Shown here: positions 9,541-64,000 of the stretch, in pieces | Numbering within the stretch: position 1 is the first letter of the stretch | Layout: each line of letters begins with the position of its first letter | Assembly (NCBI RefSeq): GCF_003918875.1 | Contig: NW_025767537.1 | Location: forward strand, 248,001 to 312,000 | DNA length: 64,000 nt | DNA from: Haliotis rubra | Lineage: Eukaryota | Reading direction: 5' to 3' | Notes under the pieces: model-generated | What the model was told of the DNA's origin: nothing | The model's database searches: none | Seen by the model: the letters and a program-made list of their open reading frames with translations, nothing else | Translations under genes and position numbers: made by a program

Positions 9541-10053
9541 AATTATGATATTACTATTTGAGACATGATGTACATACATGTATGTATATCTTGAACCACT
9601 GACGAGAGTACGTTATGATGTACATATATGGTAGACTTGTGATACACACATGCTTTTGTACAATGCGTCAGTGTGTTTCTATACAGAGTAGATTGTTGTT
9701 TATTGATTTTTAATTATTCATTACTTTTATGGAGGGTGATACTGAGTAACCATTTTAACGTGTGGAGGCCACTTGATCTATTCAGTGTCGTTTTAGTATT
9801 TTCACTCAGATTTAATTACATACGCATGTAGAAGGGATTAGTTCCGTTGTCCAGTGGTTAGAGCGTCCATCCGGAATGTAGTCCTCGGCAGCTGCAGCCT
9901 GCCTATAAACCATCTTTGATGGTACTTTTTCTTACCTTTGTCAAGTAATGAAAGAGGATTAACATACACTGGTCACATCGGAGTCATTATACTATTTCAG
10001 AGTGGTGTGTCTATGTTCAACAGCGTAGAACCACTTGCAGTAACACTATGGAA

Positions 10054-10298
10054 CCGGGTTTTGTTCTGGAAGTGAAACCAACCTCACCTCACCGGTTTTG
10101 TTCTGGAAGTGAAACCAACCTCACCTCACGTCACCGGTTTTGTGCTGGAAGTGAAACCAACCTCATCTCGCCTCACCGGTTTTGTTCTGGAAGTGAAACC
10201 AACCTCACCTCAACTCACAGGTTTTGCTCTGGAAGTGAAACCGCTCTCATCTCACCTCACCGGTTTTGTTCTGGAAGTGAAACCGACCTCACCTCACC
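10054..10298. repeat. 42-bp minisatellite, 6 copies
   Basis: Unit CCGGTTTTGTTCTGGAAGTGAAACCAACCTCACCTCACCTCA. Confidence 0.95.
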
Positions 10299-10721
10299 TG
10301 CATTTATTATTGCTTAATATTACACAACATGCGTATGCCCACAATCAGGAACCCCTTGACAAGCATATTGTATCTATGAAAGATCTTCTCTCTAGAAGAC
10401 AAATATCGTATTCAACCATATGATTGTAATTTTGAAGACATCTCCCAAGAGCATTATCCACGTGGATGTAAGAGGTCAGCGTAACAGAATGATCAGTGTT
10501 GTCTATCCTCGGATACAGAAATTCGTTTGGAGTAAAGGGCAAAATAAATGTGAAACATATATGAAATGACCAGTAAAAGTCGCCGGTGACACCAGGTGTT
10601 CGCGAATAGGCCAACTAATCATTCTGGATACACAATATCAGTCCTCAAAAGTCGACGATTTCTTTTCTATATTACATATGTGTTAATTTTTTCATAACAA
10701 CAACTTATCGCACTGATCCGA

Positions 10722-10891
10722 CTGACTGACTGACTGAATTTGGTTTTACGCCGCTTTTAGCAATATTCCAGCAACATCACGGCGGGGGACACCAGAAATG
10801 GGCTTCACACATTGTGCCCATGTGGGGATTCGAACCCGGGTCTTCAGCGTGACGAGCCAACGCTTTGACCACTAGGCTACCCCACCGCCCC
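10722..10891 (-). mobile_element. Full-length short tRNA-derived SINE with tetranucleotide tail
   Basis: Head GGGGCGGTGGGGTAGCCTAGTGG...GGTTCGAATCCC; tail GCTGGAATATTGCTAAAAGCGGCGTAAAAC(AGTC)n; TSD gcactgatccga on both sides. Confidence 0.93.
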
Positions 10892-13091: not shown

Positions 13092-13165
13092 CTCTTGTAC
13101 CACCGATAGTGGTTTTATGAAGAATGAAGAAGTTGAAACATTTGATAAAGTGATACAAAACTCAT

Positions 13166-13393
13166 TTAAATAAATCAATCCCGTTCTAATCACATCTTAC
13201 GATCACATTCAAGTAAAATACAGTTCTAATCACATCTTACGATCACATTCAATTAAATCAATCCCGGTCTAATCACATCTTACGATCACATTCAATTGAA
13301 TCAATAATGTTCTTATCACGTGTAACGATCACATTCAATTAAATCAATAATGTTCTAATCACATCTTACGATCACATTCAATTAAATCAATCC
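13166..13393. repeat. ~43-bp minisatellite, ~5 copies, expanded only in U1
   Basis: Unit AATTAAATCAATCCCGTTCTAATCACATCTTACGATCACATTC; single copy at ~22280 and ~30950 in sibling units. Confidence 0.9.
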
Positions 13394-13854: not shown

Positions 13855-16800
13855 AGCAAAATGACGCTTCCATATCATGTTATGTAACACAAAATAACGG
13901 ACACACTTACCCTGTAATTGAATTAGCAATATTCCCATTACTGAAAATGAGTCTGCTTTGTATTATTGTAAAGCAGATGTGTTTCACAAGAAATAGAGCA
14001 CGTTGTCCAGTGTCAGTGATGGTCTAGTGCGATATCCAAGCAATAAAGAAACAAATGCTGTGTTCTTTTGGCACTATAGTACTGCACAATCGACGTGCGC
14101 CAATTGAGAGCTCCATGGTGTAAGAAACTCACAATAAATCAAAATTCCCAAATAATCAGAAAAATACGCCTGAGCAAAAATATCAAAACGTTGGGGAAGA
14201 CACCAGTATTGATTTGACCATGTCATCATTTCAGCGAGCTATTGTAAGCCAGCGTTCCCCTCAAGGGACCTATGAACACAGCCAGTTTCTGCTGGATTGC
14301 AATAATGTTTCCAGATCCAGCGATACAGTAATCTCATATCCAACATATTTCCTTACGGTTTTCAGATCAAAGTATGCCAAAGATGATGTAGAGTTTTAGT
14401 CAAGGGAGGTCACTCATAATATTGCTCGCATTTTCACTCCCGTTCATTGTGATAACACAACATTAAGTACGTACAAGTTCCTTGCATCAGTGTTGTAGAA
14501 TTACGTAATTGGATTGAAAGGTATTCTACTTCTTTTTTATCATACTTCTTCAACATTTCCACATAGTACAAAAAGAGTTTCGGGCAACGCTTTCGAACGT
14601 TGAAAAATGTTCCTACTTACAACGGTAAGATTTATGTCAACTCTCCTCCATTGACGTCAGGCATTGGCCAGATGATAATATTCGCGAGGTCGGTAAGGAG
14701 GTTGTCTAAAGTATACTCATGGTAAATATTTTGGACACATTTTCAACTCCTATGCATGCAGTAGAACCGAATCTTGACTGCTCTAGTTTATGCCCCCAGT
14801 GACTGTTTCTTGTCATGAAATGCACATACATTCAGCTTTTCCCATCACCTTTAATCTTACACGTTTTATTCTTTCCAATACGCGTTGACGAATTTTCATC
14901 GCTGTCAACATGCTCAGATCTATAGATGCTGCAGATGTTGTTTGCACATGTTTATGTTTAAAATCGGACATAGCAAAGTGATCTTTCAATAATTACACTG
15001 GATGTGTGTCCGCGTTCACAAATCTTATTGTGTATTTTTCATGTCATAACACTGTAAAATGCGTGGTGTAGTACAACATGATCTTTCCCCAAAAATGTAC
15101 TCAGTTCATTTAGTACCAGATGCACACACACGTGTTCTTAAGTGTGGAGTATTAATCGTTGATATTTATGACATTTTTGGACTATTTTCTACCGTCTAAA
15201 TGAGTTTCCACTCATTGTAAATTGGTGGTCACGAAGACCTGATATGTTGGATTCACTTTGTGAAGTCGTATCGCCTAATCACCATGTGAGCCGTGTCCTT
15301 GTTTAGAAATACCTTTTAATATAAGTAATATCGCATGGTGTGGTCGAATGCAGAAAGTTATACTAAAAATAAGTGGAAACGAATTCTTGGACATTGAGTG
15401 CCAAATTAGCTTTTAGTGATTTTAAGGTTGGTGAAGTGTATAATTACATCGAGGAGCGGGCATGTTTCAAAAGAACTAATCAGTGAATTGCTTCTCGGAA
15501 TGCGGAAATTGAATCAACGTGTCGGGAAATTAACACTTCTTCAAGATTACTTTATTCCAATGCCGCCATTGTAACACTTTAAGTAACGGTATTTTTTCCT
15601 GCGGAAACTCTCCAATGAAACTAAATTAGATTGTTCCCGGAGATCTGAAGGAGCTGGCTGGAAGAAGAACGATTCAGATGATGCACCCAACAGAGAAAGT
15701 CCTGGAATATATGCATTAGTGATAGGTAATGCCGTAATGTTTCTTGCATTATCAGTAATCAGCGTGGGCAAATTAGCGTAGTTTCACGTCAGTTTTGACA
15801 ACATTGTCGCACCAGCGATTGCAAACAGAGCCTGGATGTTCGAATTGATAATCATTCGTTTTAGTTATTTACTATACATTTTGACGACTGCCGTGTTCAG
15901 GGAATACATGACAACACGTGTTGACAGTTGCATCTGTACAGTTGCATCTGTAAGCATAGACGTGACCATCACCACAGGTATGTCATCATCAAAGTGGATA
16001 CTCTCACACATCGGTAGGCCATCCAGCTGTTTTCACAAACAGGGGCTCGGTGATCTCTTAGTTATGCGTTGGCAGAATTTCTGCGACTTGTGCTCCGTTA
16101 TTGTGAAACTCTCATGTACGACTTTGAAAACCCTCCGAGCTACATACAATGTATTTGTATAATAAAGATGTGCATTTTTGCACAATTCAGGTGCATACTG
16201 TTGTGTAACTCAGATGAACATTCGTGTGAAACTAGAGTGTATGAACAGAAAGTCTCAGAGTGAATCAAACTGTTTGATCGCTAGGGTGTTTCGCTAGAAG
16301 GCCCGGTTCCACTAATACGGATGAAATCTATCGACTTGTTATGATGTTCATTTGTGAGTTGCCCTCCAAATTCACCACTTTAATATCTTAATTTCAAACT
16401 ATATCCAACTAATATTTATGTCTAGTCTTGTCAGTACCCTCTCACCTAAAAGCAGCTATATCCGTTGTGTTCAATCATATGATTTGATTCATATCAGTAT
16501 ACTGTAGATGTATCAATGAGTGATCGATGAATGGTTGTGTGTTTGAAGTCTGCTGTTAAACAGAGTGACAACTTAATGTGTGAGAAATGTTTAGCTTAAA
16601 ATGATGATGTTTTTGGACGTGTGCTTGTTTGATAAATCAATCGAGTGGTATACTAAAATGACGTGATTATTAAGGGATATCTGCGACTCGAACCCGATTA
16701 GCGGATCCTATATGCACATCGATCATCAAAACCGGAGGGCTAAGGGGGTTGCTATTATCATTGCTTTTCTTTTTATCTACCTGTTGTTCTTTGTTTGTTT

Positions 16801-17517
16801 TACAATCGTCATTGATGTCACGACAATGTTTCAAGCCTTCAAGTAAACGAGCAATCTCTATTTCAAAACATCTTTTGGTTCATCAGATATTTTTCGTTTT
16901 TAGTTCTACTAGAATGTCAAATTGACCTAATGTCCGAGAACTTCAACCCTCACGGGTTAAAAAAATATGAATACACATTTCCTGTAATGTTTATTCGAAA
17001 GTTTCTTAAACGTATTGTAATCCAACTTTTTAATCAAATCACAAAAGACATCAGCATCATGACTGTACTAGTAGCTCCACGGCATGTTGAGATGAAAATG
17101 GATTTTGCTCTTGATCTAAACCTTGTGCCTCCGGTTTATTACCGTGTCATGTTTTTGTAATTTCCTTATGTCAAATGTCAGGCGTGGACGCCAGTGCGGG
17201 GTAAACGGGAAAATCTCACGAATTCCTCAATAATTAACGACACGACTGGAATCCTGGCCTTGACGTAAGCTTGCCCGTAAAGAACCAAACTGTTTGATCT
17301 CGCGGGTGGGCATTGTGTGATGGCCTGTATCCATTAATACTGATGAAATCTATCAAATTCGTTTGGTGGAGTGCCCTCCAAATTCACCACGTTAATATCT
17401 TAACCCTTCTCTGTATCAAATCAACATTTATATCTAGTCCTTTTTAGTACCATCTCAGCATGAATAACCTATTTCTTCAATCATGTGATTTGATATTTTG
17501 GGCGTAGGTGTATTTGT

Positions 17518-18075: not shown

Positions 18076-20784
18076 AGTCTGTTATTGGCAGTTGTAACAT
18101 CGAGTGACAACCTAATTTGTGAGGAAGGCGTTGCTTAAAAATACGCTGTTCATGGACGTTTACCAATTTGATGAAGCGTTCCAGCAGTGAGGACTGAAAG
18201 CTGAACGAATATTACCAAGAGATGTCTGGGACTCGATACCACGAGAAGCCGATGCTAAGCACATCGATTCTCTAGGCCTACACCACCCATACCACGAGGG
18301 CTAAGGGATTGCCATCAATAACACACAGCGTCTGTTGAATGAGTGTTATTGCGATTGCACATATCGTTTCATATTGTGAAAAGATGAGCGTATCCTACCC
18401 ACACTCAAGGCGCTCTTCATAAACACATAAGATGTTTTCAAAACTAATTTTCTTGAAGACATTATCTTTATTCTTAGCTTCCATTTGACAAATCTAAAAA
18501 CACGTTAAGGTCATTTACAGAATGCCATAGATTCCAGATAGATTGAAGTTGAGAGGCAGACATACTGAAATATCCTCAAGGGTATTTTAGAGGCTGATTT
18601 ATAAGGCTGATATACGATTTACGATCTTCGTCTTTTGGATCAAAAGTAAGGAAACATTTCTCGCATGGCCGACATCACACACTTCCGTCGACATTCTAAC
18701 TTCTGTGTACAGGGTATGAAATATTTAATGTGTAATAACTCATTCAAAGCAAGCTTCCTAATTTTTATATCCAATTAGAGTAAATTCGCCTGTAACTCTA
18801 TATGGTTCTACTTTTAGAGTAAAGGCACCACTGCAGAATCTTATTTGTAATTGTCTTTTACCTAGTTGTAAATAGCCATAAATATTGTATAGTGGCTCTT
18901 CGCTACAAATGATGTTGGATGCAAAATAAAAGTATCATTAACTATGGGTTGCTTCGCAAATGCCACACAATCCCACTAATAGTAGCAGTAAGACATTCTA
19001 GTGACAACAGGCATCACAGATACTTGTTCTTTTATTATTTTTTCACCGACATCGAACGTGAGCAAGTGTCAATTTCATGTCCATTCAGTACTATTTATTT
19101 TAGTCATTATCCTTTTATATATATTTGTCCAATCCTTTCCAATTCCGAAAGTTGTTGTGCCATGTCATAAATGCAAGAGAATGCAATGTCGAGAGCATGC
19201 ACACGTCGTTTTATTTGTCTTATTTTTTTTAAAAAAAATGAAAATATATCGAGAATAACCCTTTGAATTGTCCACACAAATTTACACCTTTTACTTGACA
19301 TCATTCTCATAAAAGGCTCCGTGTTGGTGATCTTCCAAGTACATATATTTCTGAAGCGCTTTTGCTGAACTGGGAGAGAAAACATCTACCTAAATACACC
19401 ATACAAATTATTGGCTGAAACGCGCTTCTATGTAGAGCAATGTTCTAATTCTTACAGATCAGTACAACCTGAACAATGGGGTCAGCAGTGATTTGTTCTT
19501 ATCAGGTTTGTATAGTAAATGGAAATAAAGGATGAGAAGTCAGACGATTTGAGAGATACAATCATGTTTGTAAGACCTGGTGATTAGGTTCTCAATGCAC
19601 AAACAGGTTCAAAATTATATAAATCTCCCACTGTCTTGGTGCGGGCAAATACTGACTGAATTTGTCCACCATTGTTCTTGGGAAAATTAGATTAATTTTA
19701 ATTACAACCCACATCTTATGCCTCGCGCTTAGCATACCGCCATAGTTCGAACAAAATACGTTGCCAAATCTATTACACACAATATTGGACGCGAATGGCC
19801 TTGCTAGCAGAATGTCTTCAGACAGATATTTATCAATGAGTTAAACTCTCCTAACCCGTGACGAGCTACAGCTTGGATCGCCTTGGTTACAGATTTATTT
19901 TCTGTGCTTGTTCGACTGCAATTGTCAGTATCAGTTCGGTGTACCACAAGGGAATTCTCTTTCGCTAGTTTCATTACCAGTGAATACCACGACAGGAGAT
20001 CCATTGCGACCAGATGATGTTAGTCTTTCTTATGCCATGTGTATGTTGTGTGTAAATGGTTTAGTTTCATAACATTAACACTCATGCGAGGAATTGGGAT
20101 TGATTTTGTAATCTGGTTTCGCGTGGCATAGTTTGTCCTTTGGTGCTGGAATGGAGACATTACTCCTGTATATGCCATCTCTGTGTCAGCTCGTCCACGT
20201 CGCAATGGCTTTGATTCTGTAATCCCCTTAATCCTTTGAGAGATCGTCAGTATTAGCATTACATAATTAATATGGAATCAAACATTCTGCGATACCATAA
20301 ACATGATTACCTTATTGTACTTTTGAGATAATGTGGATCACGAGCTATACCCGATTTCTTGATTATTTATTGCACTATGTGTTACATAACGACGACCTTT
20401 ATGCTTCGGTAATAATGATGAAAAATATTCCTGGAATCACACTTTCAAACTATTTTCAACATTATTTACTAACAACCATGGATGCGTTAACATAAGATTG
20501 ATTAACTAAAGAATGAATGAATCAGGTTTTCAATTTTGTTTTTTTGAAAATGTTTCAATCGGGCTTATATACTAGTAGTGTTTTATCCAAACCCACTATA
20601 GAAACCACAAGAAACATAATACAGCTTCATGCATATCCAATGCTACACCCATACTCATTTGTAAAGTAAACCTTGAACAGTGAATACATCTTGAATGAGT
20701 AACGAAGCAAGCATTTGAAGTGCAAGTTTACACGAAACCGTTTTGTCTTGCACTGTTTCAGGATAAAAAAGTGTTTGTCAAGTA

Positions 20785-21550
20785 CAGTACAACCAGAAAT
20801 TATTGAGAATTTAAAGATTGTAATGTTTTTAATTTTATTTCACTCATTACTCACGTATTAATGTGAATATTAGCAGAACATAACTCCAGATTCAACGACA
20901 GGTGAACAGTTAGTATTTTGTCAAGTCACCATGGGCAGCGATGCAGGCTTCAATGCGGCGGGGCATACTACTGATCAAAGAAGTTAGAAAGTCGTGGTCC
21001 ATGCTGTCCCAATATCGGACCACCTCTTCTTTCATTTCAGCAATATTTGTCAGATTTTTCTTATTGACACTTTCCTTCATAAGTCCCCAAACATTTTCTA
21101 TTGGATTTAGGTCAGGGCTATAGCTTGGCCAATCTAATAATGTCATACTTTGGGTCCGAAACCAGGCCTGTGAATGCTTTGAACGATGTTTTGGGTCGTT
21201 GTCCTGCTGGAAAATGAAACAATTTCCATGGAACACGTGAGCAGATGGAAGTAAATGTCCCTCGAGAATATCTGTGTACCGCTCACTGTTCATATTCCCT
21301 TCAAATACACAGAGGGGCGTTGCCCCTAACACAGCTATGCCACCCCACATGTTAAATTTCGGACTGTACTTTGGGCGCTGATACAGAGGTTTTTAGTTTG
21401 TTTGGTCCAGAAATTCAGTGTATTAGGAAACAGCCACATAGAACTTTCATCTGAGAAAATCACATTGTCCCAGTTAAAATTTATACGCTGTAAGCACCAG
21501 TTCAACCTTCGCTCCTTTTGTTCAGGTTTCATGATCGGTGATGGAATTCT
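20785..21550 (-). mobile_element. 5'-truncated Tc1 (DD34E) transposon
   Basis: One TIR-like end TA|CAGTACAACCAGAAATTATTGAGAAT at 20785; transposase fragments. Confidence 0.9.
20910..21532 (-). pseudogene. Tc1-like transposase catalytic domain, frameshifted, N-terminus missing
   Basis: VIFSDES, MWGGI, FQQDNDPKH, WPSYSPDLNPIENVW; 34 residues between D and E; frameshift near 21400. Confidence 0.95.
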
Positions 21551-22012: not shown

Positions 22013-22167
22013 GGGGCAGTGGGGTAGCCTAGTGTTCAATGCGTTCACTCGTCACGTTGAAGACCCGGGCTTCGATTCCCCACATGAGTATATTGTGAGA
22101 AGCCCATTTCTGGTGTCCCCCGCTGTGATATTGCTGGAATATTGCTAACTAAACTCACTCACTCACT
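22013..22167 (+). mobile_element. tRNA-derived SINE (same family as 10722-10891)
   Basis: A/B boxes, (CACT)n tail, TSD cacgtatg; empty site at ~30820 in U3. Confidence 0.92.
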
Positions 22168-25100
22168 TCGCACGTATGGTTACTGGAAGCCTTGCAGTAA
22201 GGGGATACACCATTAATTTCAACATCATAAGCAAAACACATCTTTATGGTTAAATCAATATGATACAAACCTCATTCAATTAAATTAATCCCATTCTAAT
22301 CACATTCACTATTACTTACTAACGACAGTATCACGTTTGTCCACTCAGCAACATGACACGTTCTTATCATGTTATGTAACACAAAATAAGTAAGAGGAGA
22401 GGCAGACCATGCAATTCAGTTAGGAATATCAATATTACTGAAAACAACTCTCTAAACCAGATATGTTTTACAAGGAATCAAGCACGTTGCTTAATGTCAC
22501 GGAATCCCAGCAATGTGGGAACATAATGTTATTCTATTTTGGTAACAAAGCGATGAATAATCGGCGTGCGCCAGTTGAGGGCTCCATCATGTAAGAAACT
22601 CACAATAAAGCAAATTCCCAAATAAACAGAAAACCACAACAGAGCATGACAAATACCAATGCTTGGGGAAGACACCAGTATTGATTTGAGTGTGTCATCA
22701 TTTCAGCGAGCTATTGTAAGCCAGCCTTTACCTCAAGGGACCTATGAACACAGCCAGTTTCTACTGGATTGCAATAACGTTTCCGGATCCAGCGATACAG
22801 AATCTCATATCCAACTTATTTCCTTACGGATTTCAGATCAAAGTGTGCCAAAGATGATGTAGAGCTTTAGTCAAGAGAGGTCACTCACAATACTACGTGA
22901 ATTTTTCACTCTCGTTCATTGTGATAACACATATCATTAAGTATGTACAAGTTCCATTCGTCAAAGTTCTAGAATAATGTTATTGTATCCTTAAGGTGTT
23001 TTACTTCTTTTGTATAATATTTCTTAAAGCGTTGCATGGTTTAAAAAAAACCGCGGTACAGAAATATGTTTGGTCCAATGCTTTGGAACTTTGAGAAATG
23101 TTCTGACAAGAAACGGAAAGATTTACGTCAACTATGCTCCATTTAACTATGCATCATTTAGTAAGATGGTTATATGCAAGAGGTCGGTAAGAAAGTGGTT
23201 TCAAGTATACTCATGGTCATTATTATTAGGTCGGAGAATTATTGCAAGATAAAATGTCGCATTTTCAACTCCTGTCAAAGCAGTTCAGTTGCATCTTGAC
23301 TGCTACAGTTTATACAAACATTGACTTTACTTGTTATGAAATGCATAATTATCCATTTATCTTTTTTCCACCTCCTTTATGTTACACTTGTTATTGTTTC
23401 TAATAATTGGTGACGAATGTGCGTCATAATCAACACACTCAGATGTGCAGATACTATAGATATCGTTTGCACATGTTCATGTTTGATACCTTAAATAGCA
23501 AAGTGATCCTCGAGTAAATTACACTGGGTGTATGTCCGCGTTCACAGTCCCATTGGTTCTTTTCAAGTCATTACGCTGTCGAAAATCGGGGATGCAGGAC
23601 AACATGGTCTTTCTCTGCACATCTACTGGGTTCATTATCAAATGCCAGTACCAGATGCACATATGTGTGTTTATGTTTGAAATATCAATAACTGCGATTG
23701 ATGACTTCTTTGGACTCTTTTCTCCTGTCTGAATGTGGTTCCACTCATCAACAGTTACTAATAGGACCTCATACGTTTGATACAGTTTGTGAGGTCGGTT
23801 TGTCTAATCACCATGTGAGCCGTGTCTTATTTTAGAAATTGTATATAATATAATTCTTATCACATGATGCTGTCGAATGCAGAAGATCATACTAAAAATA
23901 AGTGCAAAAACATTCTCTCACCTTTAGTGCCAAATTAGTTTTTGGTGAATTTACAAGGTTGGTGAAGTGTATAATTAGGTTGAACAGCGGGCCTGTTTCC
24001 AAAGAACTAATCAGTGAATTGCTTCTCGGAATTCGGAAATTGAATCAACGTGTCGGGAAATCAACACTTCTTCAAGATTACTTTATTCCAAGGCCGCCAT
24101 TGTAACACTTTAAGTGATGGTATTTTTTCCTGTGGTGACTCTCAAAAGAAGCTACATTAGATTGTTTCAGGAGACCTGAAGCAGCCGACTGTTAGAAGGA
24201 CGATTTAGTGCATATACTCAACAGAGAAAGTCATGGAATAAATGCATTAGTGATAGGCAATGCCTTGATGTTTCCCGCATGGATGGACACATTAACTTGC
24301 ATTGACGTGAATTGTAACACCACTGTCACAACTGAGGTGGCACACAGAGCCCGGATGTTCGGCTTTATAATCGTATGTATTATTGATCAGACTACTTAAC
24401 TTTACTTTTGACAAAATATGTTGAGGGCAATATCATTAGGTCATTCACACGTTCCAGTTTGCATCTGTAAGCATCTAACTGACCATCACGCAGGTATGTC
24501 ATCATGAAAGTGGACACCCACACGCATCCGGTCGGCCATCCAGACGTTTTCACAAACAGAAGCTCGGTGATCTCCCAGTTATGCGTTGGCAGAATTTCTG
24601 CGACTTGTCTTCCGCTTAATGTGGAACACCCATGTAAGCATTTGAAAACACTCAAAACTGTAATATTGTATATTCAGATGTGTAATTTTGCAAGACGCAG
24701 ATGCACATTGTGGTATAACTCAGATGTACATTCCTGCGAGCGTATGCACTGATTCTAGTTTCTTCATATATACCTGTCGTTCTGTGCCTTAAGTGTTGAC
24801 CATTATTGTCTATCTACATTGATGTCACAACAATGTTTCAAGTCGTAATCTCCGATATCAATCTCAAGCACAAAACGTCTTTTCGTTCATAAAATGTTTC
24901 GTTGTTGTTGTTTCTTTGGCTTTTTGTGTGTTTGTTTGTTTTCATATTCAGTCCGCCTCAAATGCCAATGTAAACTTCAAGGCGAACAGTTACATATGAG
25001 TTAAATAGTAAAAATTACACTTTTCACGTATTCTTCTGATTCGAAGTTTTTCAACGTCTTAGAATCGAATTGTTTAAACAAACCACAAAACGCCTCCCTC

Positions 25101-32100: not shown

Positions 32101-33138
32101 GTATTAAGCGCCAAATGAGCTTTTAGAGAATTTCCAATGTTGGTGAAGTGTACAATTAGGTAGAGCAGCGGCCTTTTTCAAAGAACTAATCAGCAAACTG
32201 CTTCTCGGAATTCGGAAATTGAATCAACGTGTCGGGAAATTAACAATTCTGCAAGATTACTTTATTCCATGGACGCCATTGTAACACTTTAAGTGATGGT
32301 ATTTTTCCTGTGGTGACTCCCCAACAAAGCTACATTAGATTGTTTCAGGAGATCTGAAGCAGCCGGCTGTAAGAAGAACGATTTAGTTGATATGCTCAAA
32401 AGAGAAAGTCCTGGCATAAATGCATTACTGATACTCGAAGCCTTGATGTTTCCTGCATTGATAGTAATTAATGTGGACAAATTAACTTGGTTTGACGTCA
32501 GTTTTAACACCACTGTCACAACTGAGGTGGTAAACAGAGCTTGGATGTTTGACTTTATGATCGTGCGTCTTATTTATTAGATTACTTGAGTTTACTGCTC
32601 ATGTTCCGTATTTACCCTGCAAACACCTACCGACACATTTTGTGGACACATATCACTCGGTCATCCACACGTTCCAGTTGGCATCTTTAAGCATCAACTT
32701 GGTCATCACGCAGGTGTGTCATCATCAAAATGGGCAATCACACACATACCGTAGGTCATCCAGATGTTTTCCACCAACCGACTCTCGGTGATCTCTTAGT
32801 AATGAGTTGGTCAGAATTTCTGCGACTTGTTCACCGTAAATGTAAACCTACCATGTGCAAGGTAAATATTGAGGAACTCCGAAGTTCATAATAATACAAT
32901 TCCGATTACATTATTAGATCAGACGCACATTGCTGTATACCTCAGATTCTCGGGGTTTACAACACTTATACCATGAGGGCTAAGGGGGTTGCCATTAATA
33001 ACAAATGAATGTTATAACGACAGTGCCCCCATTCATTGCACCTGTCATAAACACATAAGATGTGTTCTTTGTATACTTGTAATCAAAACCAATTTGGATA
33101 AAAACATATTATTTTTATTCCTAGCTTTCGTTTGACGA

Positions 33139-33421: not shown

Positions 33422-33897
33422 TCGTTTGACGACAAAAACTGTTTCGAGTCATTTACAGAATGTAATAATATATATTTCATTTCTTTAAGTTAAGTCGGAG
33501 AAACTGAAACATCCTTAAACATAAGACTGATGTACGCTTTAAGGTCCTCGTGTTTTCTATCAAAAGTCAGCTAACATTTCCTGCATGGTTAACACCCCAC
33601 ACTTCCCTCAGCATTCCACCTAACGTGTACAGAGTATGAAATATTAAATGTGCAATAACTCATTCAAAGCAAGCTTACACATCTTGAGATCCAATTACTG
33701 TAAATTCGCCGATAACTTCATTTAATGCTATTTATAGAGTAAGGGCAGCACTGTGGTACCTTATGTGTAATTGTCTGATACATAGTTGTAAAAAATGCAT
33801 AAATATCTTATGATGGCTCTTCGCTACAAATGATGTTGGCTGTAAACGTACCGTCAACTGTGGGCCGCTTCGCAAATACCACTACATCCCAGTAATA

Positions 33898-40000: not shown

Positions 40001-40648
40001 CTGGTTCTTTCTCAAACGCCAGTACAAGATGCACATGAGCGTTACGTTGGTACTGCATTTGAATCTGTACGAGGAATGACACTTTCTTGGACTCATTTCT
40101 TTCTTCCATCTCAATGAGTTCACACTCATCATAATCTGTTTTTCATGACCTCATGTGTGGGCCTGAGTTAGTGAAATCGTTTCCAAATATGGCCTCGTGA
40201 GCACCCCGTGTTTATGAAAACAATCGGTTACACTAAAATTGAGAGTGGAAATGAATGCTGGAACATTTAGCGCCAAATTAGCTTTTGGTGAATTTTAAAG
40301 GTTAGTCAAGTGTATAATTAGGAAAAGCAGCCCACCTGTTTCAAACAAAATAATCGGTGAATTGCTTCTCGGAATTCGGAAATTGAATCAAGATGTCGGG
40401 TAATTAACACTTCTTCAAGATTACTTTCTTCAAGTCCCGCCATTGTAACAATTTAAGTATTAGTCTTTTTGCCTGCGGAGGTTCTTCAATAAAGCTACGT
40501 TAGATTGTTTTAGAAGATGTGAAGCAGCCGATTGTAAAAAACGATTTAGTTGATATACTCAACAGAGAAAGTCCTGGAATAAATGCCATACTGATACTCA
40601 ATGCCTTGATGTTTCCTGCGTGGTCGGAGATCAACGTGGACAAATATA

Positions 40649-46412: not shown

Positions 46413-49400
46413 TAATCCTATGTAAACTAACACCGATCTACACTTTTGCGAAACGATGATATACGATCGGGTTAATCGTCTGTTATAACAAGCCTGGGTT
46501 GCTGAAGACCATGCCTAACGTGAAACTTCAGGGGGCTTCGTATAACGTCATTAGGATAAAAAAGTATAAGATCGTGTCTTCAAAGCAAATATTGATATCA
46601 CCCATAGGCGGATCAACGTAAGTGTTGGCGTTATTAACTTCATATACAACAGACATCGTCGATCACGGTTCTCAACATATTTCTTATAGAGTCATTCCTC
46701 ATCCAACCAAATGGTAAAGTTCATTTCGTTCAAGGCAATTCTCAGATCTTTCATCTTAGGCCTAGATCCGATGATCCGATACACGCTAATAACTTTACTT
46801 GTGGTCATGGGGGATCTAGACCGTCTTTGATACGTTTAATAATGGTGTAGATATGCCTTCAGTGTGTCCCCCTACACATATTGAACTAACGTAACGTATG
46901 ACAGCCTTGGAAGCAGTTCACACAGATATACGGTCAAGGAACTGGCTAACATATCTATATGGATTTGAATTGAAATGGCAAGCTAATAATGGTCGTTGTC
47001 TTTGACAGTCTTGCTCAACATTACATTGTAAGTCTATGTGCCAATAAATTGAAGGTGTTAGGTAGTCTATATAGAATTTTCTTAAAGCCTTGGCTCATCA
47101 ATCAAAACTTCCGGGTTCGATTCCCCACATGGGTACAAGGTGTAAAGCACTTTGGAGTTCAGATGATATTGACTAATTACAAATAACACACAATCAGCCT
47201 GGTCACACGTAACGGGCAAAATGACACTGAACACTGGGCACTTTCGGTTACTTTCACACATACTGCACACATACTGACAGACATATCCCAATAAAACGTC
47301 ATCAATTTGCAGCACGCACTCCGACATTAATCTATTATAACGCAAGCCAAACCAGATCAGGTTGATGAAATCGGTGATACTCCTCACCAATACGCCTCCC
47401 AAAAATAAGGCAATGAAGTAGTCCAAACGTCAATACAATACTCTAGCGACCCGATCACTGGCAACCCAAAACATGCCAATTCCTTCCACACATTGGACCT
47501 GAAATAGAAAACCCTCTTTCTCGAGATGCACAATACACCTTAGTTACGTGATCTGTCTCATTTGTCCATCTTCTTGGCTTTTTGTCAAGATGTGAGAACT
47601 GATACCGGTTTCGTTTGACGCATGCTTCAACCCATGAAACTTCATCGAGACATCATTGTTTTATGCATTTCAGAAGGAATAGAGAACGTTTCAAAATTGT
47701 CGGTAATATTATTGGATAAAATCCAAGTAATATAGGGACAAAAGACAGATGTGTTCTTCTGGCAATATGGTCAAGATATTAATTTTTCAAAAACAAAGAA
47801 CAAATAAATCCAAGCATGAAAACTACCAAAACCACTAGGGAAGACATCAGTATTGATGTTTTCATGTCCTTTGATGTGATTGTTTCAGCGAGCTATTGTA
47901 AGCTAGCATTTCTCTTGAGGGATCCACGAACAGGACCAGGTTCTGCTGGAATACAATTATGTGATACACTGATATCAAATCCAAGATATTTCCTTATGGA
48001 ATTCAGATAATAGTATTCCAAAACATAGAGCAATGCTTTAATCAAGAGTCAATCACAATACCACTCGCAGTTTCTCAGCATCTCTTTATCGTTGTAACAC
48101 AACATTAAGCATGTTTCTTCATCAGTGACGTGGAACATCGCAGTTGGATTGAAAGGTACACGTTTTCTACTTCTATTATATTCTACCTCTTAAACTGTTA
48201 TAATTGGAATATGTTCTGACATAAAACGACATAAGTCTTACTATCTGTACTCTGTTATATTAGTTATGGGTCATTCAATAATATGATCGTGGTCGTTTAG
48301 AAGGCGGTGCATGTATATTCAAAGTCATTATTTTGGTATTACGTTGATATCAGATGAAACGTTGCATTTTCAACTTATGAGAGTGCATGTGGACTGCTTC
48401 AGTGTGTGCCAACATTGACTGTCACTTGCCTTGAAGTGCACGTGCATTCAGCTTTTTCCATTAACCTTTTCCGTGCAAATTTCATAGTATCTGAAAGTTG
48501 AAATATGGACTGCCATCAATGTCACATAGACAACAGCAACCTTTCACATTATCGGCGTTCTCGGAGCTATCGATGCTTGTAAGCATATATTCTGGTCAAA
48601 AATACCAACATGATCCGAAATCCGAAATGACACTGGGTATATGCCAACGCTCAAAGATTCCATTGTTTCAGAACAGAAGTCTATCTAGAAGAACGGTGGT
48701 ACGATGCCACGGGACCTTTCTACAACAATGTACAAGCCACACATGGAGGTGTACGTTTGCTTCTAAATACGAATCGTTATGAAGAATGACATTTTATGGA
48801 AAGCACTCGTTTCTTTCTCCCATCTGAAAGAGTTCACACTCATCGTAAGTTTCACGATTTGGGTTTTCATGACAAAGAAATGAATTCTGGAACATTTTCT
48901 GCCAAAATAGCTTTTGGTGAACTTCCAAGTTTAGCGAAGTGTATAATTAGAAAGAGCAGCGGGCCTGTTTCAAACGAACTAATCAGTGAATTGCTTCTCG
49001 GAATTCGGAAATTGAATCAATGTGTCGGGAAATTAACACTTGTTCAAGATTACATTATTCAAGAGTCGCCAATGTAACACTTTAAGCAATGGTAATTTTT
49101 CCTGTGGTGTCTCTTCAATGAAGCTACATTAGATTGCCTCAGAAGATCTAAAGTATCCCATTGTAAGAAGAACGATTTAGTTGATACAATTTCAACAGAG
49201 AAAGTCCTGGAATAAATGCATTGCTACTAATACTCGATGCCTTGATGTTTCCTGCATGATCAATAATCAACGTCACCAAATCGACATTTTAACAACACTG
49301 TCACACCAGAGGTGGTAACAGTGCCCGGATGTTCGACTGGATGATTGAACTACTTGACTCTTCTAACGATGGCTTTACCTTGCATATAGATGTCACAGCA

Positions 49401-55049: not shown

Positions 55050-58000
55050 GTGCATCAGATGTGTTTCAGTAAGAAATGAGAATGTCATGATCATCATTCA
55101 AAAACACAAAGTAGTGCTTTAATGAAGTGAGTAAATCACAACCACCAATCCCAGTATCTCACCATGGCTTGTTATAACAATATGTTAACGTGTTCTTTGT
55201 CAGTGACGTGGAATGTCGAAGTTAGATTGAAAGGTATTCCACTTCTATATTCTATTCCCTAAAACTTTATAATTGGAATATGTTCCGACATAAAACAACT
55301 AAATTCGTATTGGTCACTCAATAATATGACAGTCTGAGAGATTGTTTAGAAGGTCGTGAATGCATACTCAGCGTCCTTATTTTGGCAGCACGGTCATATC
55401 CTATTTACAACTTCTAATATAAGAGTACATCTGGAAAGCTCCTTTTTCTGCCCACATTGACTGTCACTTGCCGTGAATTACATGTGCACTCAGCTTTTTA
55501 GATTAACCCTTTTCTTGCAAATGTCATGGTTTCTGAAAGTCGTTACCTTTCCAGCTTTATGTGGACTGCCATCAATGTGGCATAGACACCACAATCTGTT
55601 CCTCAACTTTTAATCACATTGCCTACATTATCGGAGCTGTCTCGACTAGCATATTTTCATGTTTGAAAATACCAACAAATTTCTTCCGAAATGGCATTGG
55701 GTATATCACCACGCTCAAAGATTTCATTATTTGTTTTCAAGTCATAACAGAAGTCTATCTAGAAGAACGGTGGCGCAATGCAAAGTGACCATTTTACAAC
55801 AATGGACAAGATATACATGAAGGTGTCTGTGTTTTTTTTATATATGAATCGTTACGAAGAATGTCATTTTCTGGGAAATACTCATCTCTTTCTCTCATCT
55901 GGCTTTTCATGACCACGACGTCAGTTTGTAAGATCATTTCGACAATGAATCATGTCCCTGTTATGAAAAGGTTGTATCATATGATTATGTCGAATGCAGA
56001 AGAGGGTCATACTACAATTGAGAATGAATGGAAATGAATTCTGGAACATACAGCGCCAAATTAACTTTTGGTAAATTCCAAGGTTAGTGAAGTGTATAAT
56101 CATGTAGAGCAGCGGGCCTGTTTCAAACGAACTAATCAGTGAATTGCTTCTCTAAATTCCGAAATTGAATCAACGTGTCGGAAAATTAACACTTCTTCAA
56201 GATTACTTTATTCAAGAGCCGCCATTGTCACACTTTAAGTAATGGTATTTTTTACTGTGTTTTCTCTTCAATGAAGCTATATTAGATTGTTTCAGGAGAT
56301 CTAAAGCAGCCGATTGTTAGAAGAACGATTTAGTTGATATACTCAACTGAGAAAGTTCTGGAGTAAATGCATTATGGACACACAATGCATGATGCTTCCT
56401 GCATGGTCGGTAATCAACATGAGCACATTACCTTGATTGATGTCATTTTGACAACACTGTCACAGCTGAGGTGGCTACAGCGCCAAGTGTTCGACTGGAT
56501 CATTAAACTACTTGATTCTGCTGACGATGTATTTATCCTGCACATAAACGACATGCGTTTCGGGCATATATCCATCAGTCTTGAACATGTTTGTTTATCG
56601 TTAACACACTTCTAGATGGCATGAATACATCTCTATTGGGCATAAACACAAAACCAGTAGGTATTAACACACATTAAGTAGTTATTCTCACACATCAATA
56701 GCCCTTCGAACAGTTCCAAGTTGTAATCGTGCATCCGACTTAACACGTTTTGGAGGTATTCAAGCACATCAAATACAACTGCAAGCGTTTTAGTGTGCAT
56801 TCACACTCACGAACTAGATCTTCACGTATGACATAGGTAGTGAACTGGATCCAGCATGCCTTCACACGTTCTCGTACTCATTCACACACATCAAAGTGAC
56901 CATCGCTCATAACAAGTAGGTTGTTTCACAAATAATTACACACATCCATGACATCCATTTATTGTCAACCAGTGGAATCGCAGTGTTGTTTTGGTTATGC
57001 TTTCGCAGAATTTGGCCACGGTGTACATCGTTGTAAAATTAAGATTTACATTGTTGTCCGATGTATATTATTATAAAAAACTAAGAGGCATGTTGTTTTA
57101 AAGGTCAGATGCACATTAATTAAATAGTCGGTAATACTATTTAGACACTCATTTTGGTATTTTTTTTCCATTTGAAAATTACAACATATTTCAAGTCAAC
57201 GCTTTGAGTATACCACAAACCGCCTCTCTCAGCTTCTGTTCTGGTAGCTCCTCGGTACCTTGAGCTGAAACTGGGCTTAAAGTAACGTGGCAGTTTAATA
57301 CACTTTTCATGTATTCTTCTCATTCGAAAAGATTTTCAACATACTAGAATGTACATTTTTTAGACAAACCGTAAATGGATTTTCACAGGAACATGTGTGT
57401 AGTAGCACCTCCGCGGCAGGAGTAGGAAATGGATTTCGCTCCATCAGTATGGGGTAAACGAGGAAATCTCACGAATTCCTTAATAATTAACGACACCACT
57501 GGAATCCTGGTCTTGACTTAAGGCTGCCCGCAAAAAGCCAAACTGTTTGATCTCGTGGGTGTTAAGTCAAATGGACAAATTGTCGTAGTATTCATATGCA
57601 TTTAACAAGTGCGCTCAAAATTCACCATGTTAAGATCTTACTTTGCCTCCATATGCAACCAATATTTATGCCTGGTCTTTGTAAAGTACCCAAGTGTTTC
57701 TTAAATAATGTGATTTAATTCGTTGTGGGTAGGTGTATTAGCACAATATCAGTATCCTGTAGCACTGACGGTGGTGCTTGAATGAATGATGACGGGTTTG
57801 GCATTGTTCCATGGAGAGAAAGCTTAATATGGACGTCATCGACGTTTGCCATTTTGGTAAAAACCTCAAACCGTCTACCTACAAATCTACGACAATAATC
57901 AAGGAAAGAGCTGGGACTTCAAACGCGTGATGGAAGGATCCAATCCTCGTGGGTTCTCGGTGCCTGAGATTCTCGCACCAAGAGGGCTATAGGAGATAGT

Positions 58001-61745: not shown

Positions 61746-64000
61746 TCAATCAGATGTGTTTCAGAAGGAATATTATTGTCAGTACTATTATTGTATGAAA
61801 TCCAAGTACTATAGGGACAAAAGACTGATCTGTACTTCCGGCAATATGGTCAACAAATAAAAAAAAATAAAAACAGACAAATAGGTAATTCATTAAAAGG
61901 CCATGGGTCCATGATACAAAAATAGGTTCCATTCATTGAAGTAATTATGTTTCTCTGTTGGACTTTATATAAATATAGACATGAGTTATAGGTATCCATG
62001 ATTTCCTGATGAAACACTTTCGATAAAATATGTTACCGTGAGGGACTTGATATATAATTCTTTAAGATACATATTTCAAATGATGAAGTAACGCTCACGT
62101 ACAATCAATATATGAAATTCATCTTCAACAAAAATCTCTCTTTCGATACACTATTTACATAGCCGTTCAATTATGTTCCAAAATCGACTGCTGGTTTAAA
62201 CCTACTTGGACATAGTCTCGGATGTACAGGGAAGGGAGTGTAAGATATACATGTAACATATATTTGAAATGCTTATAATAGAAGGACTCAGATGAACTGT
62301 TGACAGAAGTATCATGAGTGTTGAAGGTTGTCAAATAATCTTTGTTTAAAAAGGTGACTGAATATCTTCTTATTAACCACGTACATCCAATATATGAAGT
62401 TATGAAAAATGGGTTAGTCCACTGCTCAGCATTAATTACCTAAGAGGGCTGCAATAACTGGTTTACTGTTCTTCAAACAAAATTCAAAACAACTTTGGGT
62501 TCTCCTTGAGGCTAACGGCGTTTTTTTCTTTGTTCTTCAAAAATAATAACAAAACAAAAAACAAATATATCCGAGCATGAAAACTACCAAACCCACGAGG
62601 GAAGACACCAGTATTGACGTTTTCATTTTATTTGATGTTATTGTTTCAGGGAACTATTGCTAGCTGGCATTTCACTTAAGGGACCTATGATCAGGGCCAG
62701 TTTCTGCTGGATTGAAATTATATGATACACTGAACCCAAAATCCAAGGTATTCCTTATTCCTTACGGAATTCAGAATAAAGTAGTCAAAAACACAAAGAA
62801 GTGATTTAATCAACAGAGTCAATCACAATGCCACTCGCAGTTTCTTACCATCTCTTTGTGGTTGTAACTCAACATTAAGGACGTTAACGGTTTTTTTGTC
62901 AGTGACGTTGAGCGTCGCAGTTGGATTGAAAGGTATTCTGCTTTTATATTCAATTACATTCTGCTTCCTAAAACGTTATAATTGAACATGTTCTGACGTA
63001 AAACGACATAAGTCTTACTAACGGTGCATTCAATAATGTTATAGCCTGCAGAGGTTGCTTAGGAGGTGGCGCATGTATACTCAGCGTCATTATTCTAGCA
63101 TCACGTCGATATCAGATGATAGGTCGCATTTTGAACTTCTGAGAGTGCATCTGGAATGCTCCAGTTTATGCCCACATTGACTGTCCCGTGAATTACACGT
63201 CCAATTAGCTTTTTAAATATCACCCCTTTTCTTGCAAATTTTATAGTTTCTGAAAGTCGTTACTTTTCGTGCTTTATGTCATCAATGGGACATGGACATC
63301 AACAACCTGTTCCTCAACATCTAACCACATTGTCTGCATTCTCGGAGATGTCGATGCTTGTTAGCATATGTTCATGTTTAAAACATCAACATGATCATTC
63401 CGATATGACACCGAGTATATGCCCACTCTCAAAGATTCCATTCATTCTCATACCAGAAGTGTATGTAGAAGAACGGTGATACAATGCAACATGACCTTTC
63501 TACAGCAATGTACAAGATACACATCAAGATGTATGGGGTTTCTTTTAAATATGAAACGTTACGAAGTATTCTGGGAAGCGCTCATTTCTTTCTCCCATCT
63601 GAATGAGTTCACACTCATCGTAAGTTTCACGATTTGGGTTTTGATGACCACAAGTATGAATTCTAGAACATTTATCGTTAAATGAACCTTTCGTGAATTT
63701 CCAAGGTTATTGGAGTGTATAAATTGAAAAGAGCAGCGTGCCTGTTTCAAACGAACTAATCAGTGAATTGCTTCTCGGAATTCGGAAATTGAATTAACGT
63801 GTCGGGAAATTAACACTTGTTCAAGATTACTTTATTCCAAGGCCGCCATTGTAACACTTTAAGTGATGGTATTTTTACCTGTGGTACTTCTTCAATGAAG
63901 CTACATTAGATTGTTTCAGACGATCTAAAGCAGCCGACTTTTAGAAGAACGATTTACTTGATATACTCAACAGAGAAAGTCCTGGAATAAATGCATTACT
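61745..64000. repeat. Long tandem array unit U7 (partial, runs off the window)
   Basis: gggaagacacc block ~62598, core at 63765. Confidence 0.9.
61860..62520 (-). mobile_element. Degenerate LINE 3' fragment (RTE-X/CR1-type)
   Basis: IERLCK*CIEREIFVEDEFHILIV..RY C-terminal motif near 62090-62170; insertion absent from U4/U5. Confidence 0.7.

What the first reader, a model, noticed from the sequence alone, without database searches (positions are those of the whole stretch)
15400..15750. Near-invariant, indel-free 74-nt core inside a ~330-nt conserved block in every unit
Seen: consensus GAATTGCTTCTCGGAATTCGGAAATTGAATCAACGTGTCGGGAAATTAACACTTCTTCAAGATTACTTTATTCC has only 1, 1, 4, 5, 4, 5 and 2 mismatches in U1-U7, with four CpGs mostly retained, even across subfamilies whose flanks are far more diverged. 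Substitutions show no consistent codon-position bias, and three copies gain stops in the open plus frame, so any constraint looks nucleotide-level. The plus-strand consensus can form a long-range stem (TTGG-T-GAAGTGT-A-TAATT with AATTA-ACACTTC-T-TCAA) and local hairpins (TTCTCGG/TCGGGAA, TGTTTCAG/CTGAAGCA, GTTGA/TCAAC). I saw no clear compensatory changes. Inference: structured RNA, small-RNA source, protein-binding site or gene-conversion hotspot.
Basis: partly seen in the sequence, partly recalled or inferred. Interest (0 to 1): 0.72.

Follow-up and report, generated by a model that had tools for sequence, protein, structure and literature searches.

The report
Conserved non-coding core in tandem repeats
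Each unit of an old, roughly 8-kb tandem repeat in an unidentified animal-like genome keeps a non-coding stretch of about 84-135 bases nearly unchanged; it is not an exon or a known or folded RNA, it looks most like a protein-binding control element or a short unfolded RNA, and its function cannot be settled from this window alone.

Summary
Seven direct copies of a ~350-nt block lie 7.2-8.6 kb apart.

The core is the slowest-evolving 74-nt window of the whole repeat unit: 17 changes against ~126 expected (permutation p<1/2000). A change-point fit places the low-rate segment at 15474-15557.

It is not coding. Every frame of every copy has at least 4 stops, substitutions show no period-3 pattern, pN/pS is similar in all frames, and there are no Pfam hits.

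It is not a known or folded RNA. Rfam finds nothing, folding z-scores run from about -0.9 to +1.5, and there is no covariation.

Gene conversion is not supported; only one tract, U2-U7, is borderline.

What remains is sequence-level constraint on DNA or on an unfolded transcript. My best guess (0.38) is a protein-binding cis-regulatory or promoter module: three TCGG(G)AA(A)TT sites sit in the core and a TATA-like box lies upstream. The main rival (0.25) is a ~125-nt small RNA gene ending at a T5-6 run.

The organism and any orthologues could not be found, so interest is moderate.

The parts
15485..15558 (.). 74-nt core, unit U1
Evidence: It lies inside the maximum-likelihood low-rate segment 15474-15557.
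24016..24089 (.). 74-nt core, unit U2
   Evidence: 1 mismatch.
32195..32268 (.). 74-nt core, unit U3
   Evidence: 4 mismatches.
40359..40432 (.). 74-nt core, unit U4
   Evidence: 5 mismatches; stop in the plus frame.
48988..49061 (.). 74-nt core, unit U5
   Evidence: 4 mismatches.
56141..56214 (.). 74-nt core, unit U6
   Evidence: 5 mismatches; stop in the plus frame.
63765..63838 (.). 74-nt core, unit U7
   Evidence: 2 mismatches; stop in the plus frame.
15462..15596 (.). 135-nt indel-free stretch around the core in U1. Equivalents: 23993-24127, 32172-32306, 40336-40470, 48965-49099, 56118-56252, 63742-63876.
   Evidence: No gap in any of the seven copies. Mean K2P is 0.118, against 0.231 in the rest of the block.
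15374..15718 (.). Conserved block B1 in U1. Equivalents: 23903-24249, 32085-32427, 40246-40590, 48875-49226, 56029-56374, 63651-63998 (cut by the window end).
   Evidence: Alignment A1 and its identity profile. The nhmmer profile hits exactly seven copies.
15436..15446 (+). TATA-like box GTGTATAATTA, about 30 nt before the start of the indel-free stretch. Equivalents: 23967-23977, 32148-32158, 40310-40320, 48939-48949, 56092-56102, 63715-63726.
   Evidence: Nearly invariant in all seven copies; U3 reads TACAAT and U6 reads TATAATCA. Its role as a promoter element is inferred, not shown.
15592..15597 (+). T5-6 run at the 3' edge of the indel-free stretch, present in all seven copies
   Evidence: The 123 nt before it contain no TTTT in any copy, but 45% of random 123-nt stretches of the window also lack TTTT. 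Its role as a terminator is inferred.
18618..18967 (.). Second conserved non-coding block B3 of the same repeat unit, about 3.2 kb downstream of B1. Equivalents: 27177-27517, 33538-33883, 43778-44104, 50882-51223, 58277-58615.
   Evidence: It is the only other part of the unit with mean six-way identity above 0.6. No conserved open frame.

Best explanation
The core is a cis-acting DNA element under purifying selection on its primary sequence. It is a dense protein-binding module, of promoter-proximal or enhancer type, kept once in every unit of an old tandem array. The array has at least seven units of ~8 kb, with spacers 20-32% diverged.

Shown: the conservation, the absence of coding signal and the absence of RNA-fold signal.

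Inferred: sequence-specific factors read the three closely spaced TCGG(G)AA(A)TT sites and the neighbouring ACGTG. The module also sits just downstream of a TATA-like box, so it may double as the start region or leader of a non-coding transcript made from each unit.
For: - It is the slowest 74-nt window of the whole unit, p<1/2000. The low-rate segment is 84 nt, with 0.037 against 0.115 changes per site per copy.
- No indel occurs over 135 nt in seven copies.
- It is not coding. There are at least 4 stops in each of six frames in every copy. Substitutions by phase are 13/11/22. pN/pS is 0.56-1.8 with no frame standing out. There is no Pfam hit.
- Neither strand folds better than shuffles, and no pair shows convincing covariation. 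Constraint on duplex DNA would give this pattern.
- The motif TCGG(G)AA(A)TT occurs 2-3 times per core. Fourteen of its 18 hits in the window lie in the cores, and shuffles give about 4 hits for the whole window.
- A TATA-like box in all copies lies about 30 nt before the constrained stretch.
- Several other non-coding blocks (B0, B2, B3, B4) are kept in each unit, as in a regulatory landscape.
Against: - No target gene is visible. No unit holds a recognisable coding exon, so it is unclear what seven regulatory copies would regulate.
- The motif assignments (ETS-, STAT- or Rel-like) rest on my memory of consensus sites and were not tested against a motif library.
- No binding, accessibility or expression data are available, and no orthologue was found.
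- The TATA-like box and the T run fit an RNA-gene reading equally well.
Confidence: 0.38

Rival explanations
1. Each unit carries a gene for a small RNA of about 125 nt with little secondary structure. It would be transcribed from an upstream, TATA-containing (Pol III type-3-like) promoter and terminated at the T5-6 run. The RNA would act through its primary sequence, by base pairing or protein binding.
For: - A TATA-like box about 30 nt upstream, an Inr-like TCA at the start of the constrained stretch, and about 65 nt of further conserved upstream sequence, where a proximal element would lie.
- 135 nt without indels, and 123 nt without an internal TTTT in all seven copies, ending in T5-6 in all seven.
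- The conservation profile peaks between these two marks and dips just after the T run.
- Small RNA genes are a common content of long-lived tandem arrays (own knowledge).
Against: - No Rfam family matches even at E<=10.
- There is no stable or conserved fold, which is unusual for Pol III small RNAs.
- There are no internal A or B boxes. By inspection, there are no C/D or H/ACA boxes and no good Sm site.
- Conservation resumes at 80-90% for about 120 nt beyond the T run.
- The T run and the lack of TTTT are weak evidence: there is one T5+ run per ~590 nt, and 45% of 123-nt stretches lack TTTT.
Confidence: 0.25
2. The core is an exon or part of a long non-coding or untranslated transcript (a lncRNA exon, or the UTR of a gene whose coding exons are tiny or lie outside the window). 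B0-B4 would be its other exons.
For: - Four or five conserved blocks within about 3.5 kb are followed by about 4 kb of poorly conserved spacer in each unit.
- One plus-strand acceptor-like site (TTGTTTCAG|G) is kept in 6 of 7 copies, and B3 has a minus-strand donor-like site in all six copies.
- B0 has short signal-peptide-like ORFs in two units.
Against: - B1 has no conserved strong donor on either strand (a heuristic matrix recalled from memory).
- The block edges do not coincide with splice-like sites.
- AATAAA near the right edge is intact in only 4 of 7 copies.
- lncRNA exons rarely show 96% identity over 84 nt while neighbouring sequence decays.
Confidence: 0.15
3. The core is kept alike by repeated short-tract gene conversion between units (a conversion hotspot), not by selection.
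For: - One borderline tract: U2-U7, A1 columns 280-344, 22 consecutive matching polymorphic sites, global p=0.05.
- A 98% identical patch of ~50 nt between U5 and U7 just left of the block shows that local homogenisation can happen here.
- Pairwise distances inside the block show no split between U1-3 and U4-7.
Against: - No other pair is significant.
- Nearly all core differences are private to one copy, and the low-rate segment sits at the same place in all 21 pairs.
- Spacer HSPs are 68-80% identical both within and between the two unit groups, so the whole array looks like one old burst and the missing subfamily structure needs no conversion.
Confidence: 0.08
4. The block is the relic of a protein-coding exon of a dead tandem gene family, or a structured RNA of an undescribed family.
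For: - One plus frame of the core is open in 4 of 7 copies.
- U3 has 87- and 94-aa open frames over the right half of the block.
- A weak 3' hairpin (GCCATTG...TAATGGT) has two one-sided consistent changes.
Against: - Stops occur in every frame of every copy, and there is no codon signature.
- By eye on alignment A1, most amino-acid positions that change in the open frame change non-synonymously.
- There is no Pfam hit and no word-search relative.
- A dead exon would not be conserved.
- There is no fold signal.
Confidence: 0.06

Closest known systems
Promoter 'conserved sequence element' repeated before each variable exon of the clustered protocadherin genes (10.1101/525543; PMC7811963)
   Same: A short, nearly invariant non-coding element recurs once per unit of a tandem array whose flanks have diverged. 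It works as a protein-binding site at DNA level.
   Different: There each element precedes a ~2.4-kb open variable exon, whereas here no unit has a credible exon. That element is about 20 bp and this one is 84-135 nt. CTCF binding was not tested.
Tandem arrays of small RNA genes: snRNA arrays and SNORD115/116-type snoRNA arrays (own knowledge), and the 7.3-kb tRNA tandem repeat (PMC4041453)
   Same: The unit size is in the kilobase range. Each unit has one short, indel-free, highly conserved segment flanked by moderately conserved sequence and fast-evolving spacer. An upstream TATA-like box and a downstream T run are present.
   Different: There is no match to any Rfam family, no box motifs and no fold. 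The units are 20-32% diverged, not homogenised.
Macrosatellites such as DXZ4 and D4Z4 (PMC5687341)
   Same: Kilobase-scale tandem units, each with a functional non-coding or protein-binding segment.
   Different: Macrosatellite units are kept nearly identical by concerted evolution. Here the units differ by 20-32% and only short blocks are conserved.
Paralogous conserved non-coding elements retained after duplication (own knowledge)
   Same: Sequence-level constraint with no coding or folding signal, and a core of ~100 nt at more than 90% identity among old paralogues.
   Different: Such elements usually accompany duplicated developmental genes over large distances, not seven or more copies in an 8-kb tandem array without visible genes.

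Membership tests
Any Rfam family (known structured or small RNA) | Covariance-model score at or near the family's gathering threshold | tested here: not met
   There are 0 hits at gathering score over the window. At E<=10 over 15200-16000 no hit overlaps the core. At E<=0.5 over the window, hits fall only in unrelated low-complexity regions.
Structured non-coding RNA (undescribed family) | Conserved base pairs with compensatory changes | tested here: not met
RNAalifold covariation terms are +1.37 and -0.54 kcal/mol. Power is low with seven near-identical copies.
Structured non-coding RNA (undescribed family) | Folding energy below that of shuffled sequence | tested here: not met
   z-scores are +0.25 to +1.49 on the plus strand and -0.87 to +1.19 on the minus strand, across all seven copies.
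Protein-coding exon | A reading frame open across the copies | tested here: not met
   Each of six frames has at least 4 stops in each ~360-nt copy. The longest stretch open in all copies is 93 nt.
Protein-coding exon | Codon-position bias of substitutions, with pN/pS well below 1 in one frame | tested here: not met
   Substitutions by phase are 13/11/22 over 135 gap-free columns, which is not significant, and the excess is not at the third position of the open frame. pN/pS is 0.56-1.8 in all six frames.
Protein-coding exon | Similarity to a known protein family or to any predicted protein | tested here: not met
   Pfam at E<=10 on eight block ORFs found no hit to any ORF within the block. Pfam on all 94 ORFs of at least 75 aa found only transposase domains. 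The word search with the U2 ORF found no candidate. The large HMMER search was not run.
Pol III type-3 (U6/7SK-like) small RNA gene | Upstream TATA box at about -30 and an oligo-T terminator | tested here: inconclusive
   A TATA-like box and a T5-6 run are present in all seven copies at compatible spacing. Both are common in 62% A+T DNA.
Pol III type-3 (U6/7SK-like) small RNA gene | A proximal sequence element, and a discrete transcript | not testable with these tools
   The proximal element is lineage-specific and the organism is unknown. No RNA data are available.
Pol III type-2 gene or tRNA-derived SINE | Internal A and B boxes | tested here: not met
   No B-box match with up to 2 mismatches on either strand of the block consensus, and only two poor A-box-like matches upstream of the core. 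A genuine tRNA-derived repeat elsewhere in the window does carry both boxes.
C/D or H/ACA snoRNA | Boxes C (RUGAUGA) and D (CUGA) with a terminal stem, or two hairpins with H and ACA boxes | tested here: not met
   No conserved UGAUGA on either strand of the block (inspection of alignment A1). No hairpins are supported.
Gene-conversion tract or hotspot | Pairwise runs of matching polymorphic sites longer than permutation allows | tested here: inconclusive
   One pair is borderline (U2-U7, global p=0.05) and the other 20 pairs are not significant. Old, fully fixed conversions cannot be detected.
Macrosatellite under concerted evolution | Near-identity of whole units | tested here: not met
   Inter-unit HSPs are 68-80% identical outside the blocks.
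Protocadherin-type variable-exon array | A long open variable exon downstream of each conserved element | tested here: not met
   Outside the minisatellite, only a few ORFs of at least 120 aa were found: transposase fragments and three with no Pfam match.

The most novel reading that the evidence does not exclude
The seven cores are genes of a previously undescribed family of ~125-nt RNA polymerase III-type small RNAs. They would be arrayed in tandem, made from an upstream TATA-type promoter, ended at an oligo-T run, and would act as unfolded sequence, for example as a guide or a protein sponge.
Probability: 0.17. Interest if true: 0.6.

Novelty: new member of a known kind. Interest (0 to 1): 0.38.

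Why it matters
If the core is a regulatory or RNA element, it marks a tandem array of non-coding units that has been kept functional for a long time, with spacers 20-32% diverged. Such arrays are usually either homogenised or decaying. The core is also a compact object of 84-135 nt, easy to test by reporter, pull-down or deletion. Without the organism, orthologues or expression data it remains an orphan conserved element. The practical gain of this stage is negative knowledge: it is not an exon, not a known RNA, not a folded RNA and not a conversion artefact.

Tried and rejected
1. Coding exon on either strand. I examined six-frame translations, a leucine-rich-repeat-like look of the minus frame, and a possible 69-nt mini-intron joining two plus-frame pieces. 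Stops, frameshifts, the lack of codon signature and the lack of Pfam hits rejected all of these. The joined (spliced) reading was only inspected by eye and was never sent to a tool.
2. Immunoglobulin or variable-lymphocyte-receptor-like segments. No Cys/Trp framework, recombination signal or LRR consensus is present (own knowledge).
3. LTR retrotransposon or SINE origin. The flanks of the copies are homologous, so the copies arose by unit duplication. Only Tc1 domains were found in ORFs of at least 75 aa. Shorter RT fragments were not searched.
4. A Dscam-like docking sequence complementary to the core. No complementary match in the window exceeds what shuffled queries give. A first attempt with duplex energies timed out.
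5. Signal-peptide exons. Only two 28-29-aa ORFs were found in block B0, decayed in the other units.
6. Splice-site scan with a matrix recalled from memory. B1 has no conserved donor.
7. Finding the genome or further copies all failed:
   - Three exact look-ups of window ORFs returned nothing.
   - Two degenerate DNA patterns against metagenome contigs and one against prokaryotic genome contigs returned nothing.
   - Word searches with the two transposase fragments gave no close named relative. The best named hit is Eptatretus burgeri at 71%, which does not fix the taxon because Tc1 elements move horizontally.
8. Polyadenylation signal at the right edge. It is intact in only 4 of 7 copies.
9. 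The large HMMER protein search and structure prediction were deliberately not used. The non-coding verdict rests on the sequence itself, not on an absence of relatives.
Full report
**What is there**

The window has no N runs and looks eukaryotic and non-human.
- It is 38% G+C, with a CpG observed/expected ratio of 0.77.
- It carries Tc1/mariner transposase fragments, a tRNA-derived SINE-like repeat and several minisatellites.

From about 13.8 kb to the end of the window runs a tandem array of at least seven direct units, 7.2-8.6 kb each. The ~350-nt block of the finding occurs once per unit, at 15400, 23929, 32110, 40272, 48901, 56055 and 63680. It occurs nowhere else in the window on either strand.

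**The observation**

- The 74-nt core has 1, 1, 4, 5, 4, 5 and 2 mismatches to the stated consensus.
- It has no indel.
- It has 4, 4, 4, 3, 3, 3 and 4 CpGs.
- The otherwise open plus frame has a stop in U4, U6 and U7.

The gap-free stretch is in fact 135 nt: U1 15462-15596, alignment A1 columns 201-335.

In a MAFFT alignment of six whole units, only two regions exceed 0.6 mean six-way identity.
- Block B1 (U1 15372-15773): mean 0.79, peak 0.93.
- Block B3 (18608-18996): mean 0.70, peak 0.82.

The best 74-column window of the entire unit is U1 15477-15550.
- It has 17 mismatches to the majority, against a mean of about 126.
- None of 2000 column permutations went below 71.
- Within B1 alone the permutation p is 0.001.

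A two-rate change-point fit puts the slow segment at U1 15474-15557 (84 nt). It shows 0.037 changes per site per copy, against 0.115 in the rest of the block.

Mean pairwise K2P distance falls in steps.
- 74-nt core: 0.084.
- 135-nt stretch: 0.118.
- Rest of the block: 0.231.
- Alignable spacer between units: only 68-80% identical.

So the core evolves at roughly a quarter to a third of the spacer rate. The rest of the block is only mildly slower than spacer.

CpG retention is unremarkable. Consensus CpGs are kept 24/28, slightly below the 95.8% per-base retention of the core, in a genome with little CpG depletion.

**Not coding**

- Every one of the six frames has at least 4 stops in every ~360-nt copy.
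- The longest stretch open in all copies is 93 nt.
- Substitutions in the 135 gap-free columns fall 13/11/22 by phase. This is not significant, and the excess is at the first position of the open plus frame, not the third.
- pN/pS is 0.56-1.8 in all frames of all four partitions, with none standing out.
- Read by eye on alignment A1, the open plus frame of the core has about four synonymous changes, about fifteen replacements and three nonsense changes.
- Pfam finds no hit to any ORF within the block, even at E<=10. Across all 94 ORFs of at least 75 aa in the window it finds only transposase domains.
- A word search with the U2 ORF found no candidate.
- B3 is likewise without a conserved frame.

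**Not a known or folded RNA**

- Rfam gives nothing at gathering score. Nothing overlaps the core at E<=10, and nothing relevant appears at E<=0.5 over the window. ARAGORN finds no tRNA.
- RNAalifold on 137-nt segments of the seven copies gives about -10 and -11 kcal/mol on the two strands, with negligible covariation.
- Single-sequence MFE z-scores are +0.25 to +1.49 on the plus strand, where all seven copies fold worse than shuffles. On the minus strand they are -0.87 to +1.19.
Seven break a pair, one gives a wobble and none is compensated.
- The smaller hairpins are also broken in several copies (alignment A1).
- No sequence complementary to the core exists elsewhere in the window beyond chance.
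- Seven near-identical copies give little power, so a fold is unsupported rather than excluded.

**Gene conversion**

A Sawyer-type test on 152 polymorphic gap-free sites gives one borderline tract: U2-U7, A1 columns 280-344, global p=0.05. The other 20 pairs show nothing.

Nearly all core differences are private to single copies. The slow segment is at the same place in all pairs.

Distances inside the block show no U1-3 versus U4-7 split. Spacer HSPs are equally diverged within and between those groups. The array therefore looks like one old burst of duplication, and the missing structure needs no conversion.

**Anatomy that hints at function** (inferred, not shown)

On the plus strand:
- A TATA-like GTGTATAATTA is kept in all seven copies (U1 15436-15446).
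- About 30 nt downstream, at a TCA, the indel-free stretch begins.
- That stretch contains no TTTT in any copy and ends in a T5-6 run in all seven (U1 15592-15597).
- Conservation dips after the T run and then resumes at 80-90% for about 120 nt.
- About 65 nt upstream of the TATA-like box are also moderately conserved.

Inside the core, the motif TCGG(G)AA(A)TT occurs two or three times per copy. Fourteen of its 18 matches in the window lie in the cores, and about 4 matches are expected by chance for the whole window. An ACGTG lies between the sites.

There are no internal A or B boxes. A heuristic scan found no conserved strong splice donor in B1.

**Interpretation**

What survives is constraint on the primary sequence of DNA or of an unfolded transcript.
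- Protein-binding cis-regulatory or promoter module, 0.38. An 84-nt, near-invariant, strand-neutral, unfolded element with a homotypic site cluster is what dense factor binding produces.
- Small unfolded RNA gene using the TATA-like box and the T run, 0.25.
- Exon of a longer non-coding or untranslated transcript, 0.15.
- Conversion hotspot, 0.08.
- Dead exon or undescribed structured RNA, 0.06.

The weak point of the leading reading is that no unit contains a visible gene for the element to regulate.

**Comparison with known systems**

- It works most like the conserved promoter element repeated before each clustered-protocadherin variable exon (10.1101/525543; PMC7811963). It is not a member of that system, because there are no variable exons.
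- It resembles tandem small-RNA gene arrays and the 7.3-kb tRNA repeat (PMC4041453) in layout, but has no RNA-family signature.
- It is not a macrosatellite in the DXZ4/D4Z4 sense (PMC5687341), because its units are not homogenised.

I file it as a new member of a known kind: a paralogous conserved non-coding element.

**Limits**

- The tools hold no eukaryotic genome collection.
- Two DNA-pattern scans of metagenome contigs and one of prokaryotic genome contigs found nothing.
- Three exact look-ups of window ORFs found nothing.
- Transposase relatives did not fix the taxon. The best named hit is a hagfish protein at 71%, and the top hits, at 86%, are in unnamed sequencing runs.
- All evolutionary inference therefore rests on seven paralogous copies in one window.
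- No sequence here was taken for human.
- The large protein search, structure prediction and fold search were not used.

Noticed in passing
18618-18967, 27177-27517, 33538-33883, 43778-44104, 50882-51223, 58277-58615: A second conserved non-coding block (B3) occurs once per unit, about 2.0-3.5 kb downstream of the finding (about 3.2 kb in U1). Mean six-way identity is 0.70. It has no conserved open frame, and a minus-strand donor-like GAA|GTGTGT is invariant in all six copies.
   Followed up: partly
14176-14554, 17051-17456, 19761-19986 and their equivalents in the other units: Weaker conserved blocks B0, B2 and B4 bring the conserved part of each unit to about 3.5 kb, followed by about 4 kb of fast-evolving spacer (about 5.8 kb in U1, which has extra inserted sequence). 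In U4-U6, B4 abuts B3. In U1-U3, about 0.8 kb has been inserted between them.
   Followed up: partly
47782-47865 (-) and 62540-62626 (-): Block B0 holds short ORFs of 28-29 aa that look like signal peptides, starting MKTSIL(V/M)SSLV, in units U5 and U7. The homologous sequence is decayed in U1, U2 and U4, and no donor site follows.
   Followed up: partly
40924-41953 (+): A Tc1/mariner element is inserted in unit U4. It is 45% G+C against a 38% background, and its helix-turn-helix and DDE parts are split by one frameshift. The best relatives are 86% identical proteins from Logan runs SRR29965092 and SRR29965117; the best named relative is Eptatretus burgeri at 71%.
   Followed up: yes
20913-21392 (-): An older Tc1-like DDE fragment (160 aa open). 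The closest relatives are only 62-63% identical and come from unnamed metagenome contigs.
   Followed up: yes
10757-10891 (antisense), 22013-22148 (sense), 47084-47148, 54068-54126: A tRNA-derived SINE-like interspersed repeat. Read in tRNA sense it has A-box-like TAGCCTAGTGG and B-box GGTTCGATTCC. There are two long and two partial copies.
   Followed up: partly
6726-9543: A 27-bp minisatellite of about 104 copies with 88% matches and strong G-over-C skew. It creates artificial ORFs of up to 574 aa on both strands.
   Followed up: no
48813-48860 versus the homologous stretch of U7 (about 63590-63640): A patch of about 50 nt just left of the block is 98% identical between U5 and U7, while the surroundings are 75-80% identical. 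This may be a short conversion tract or a subfamily-specific constrained site.
   Followed up: no
34962-35240 (-): A 93-aa open frame whose sequence recalls the C-terminal end of LINE ORF2 proteins. This rests on memory only, since Pfam gave no hit.
   Followed up: no
233-661, 3712-4351, 10057-10299, 13163-13391: Further tandem repeats with periods of 144, 40, 42 and 43 nt lie upstream of and at the start of the array.
   Followed up: no
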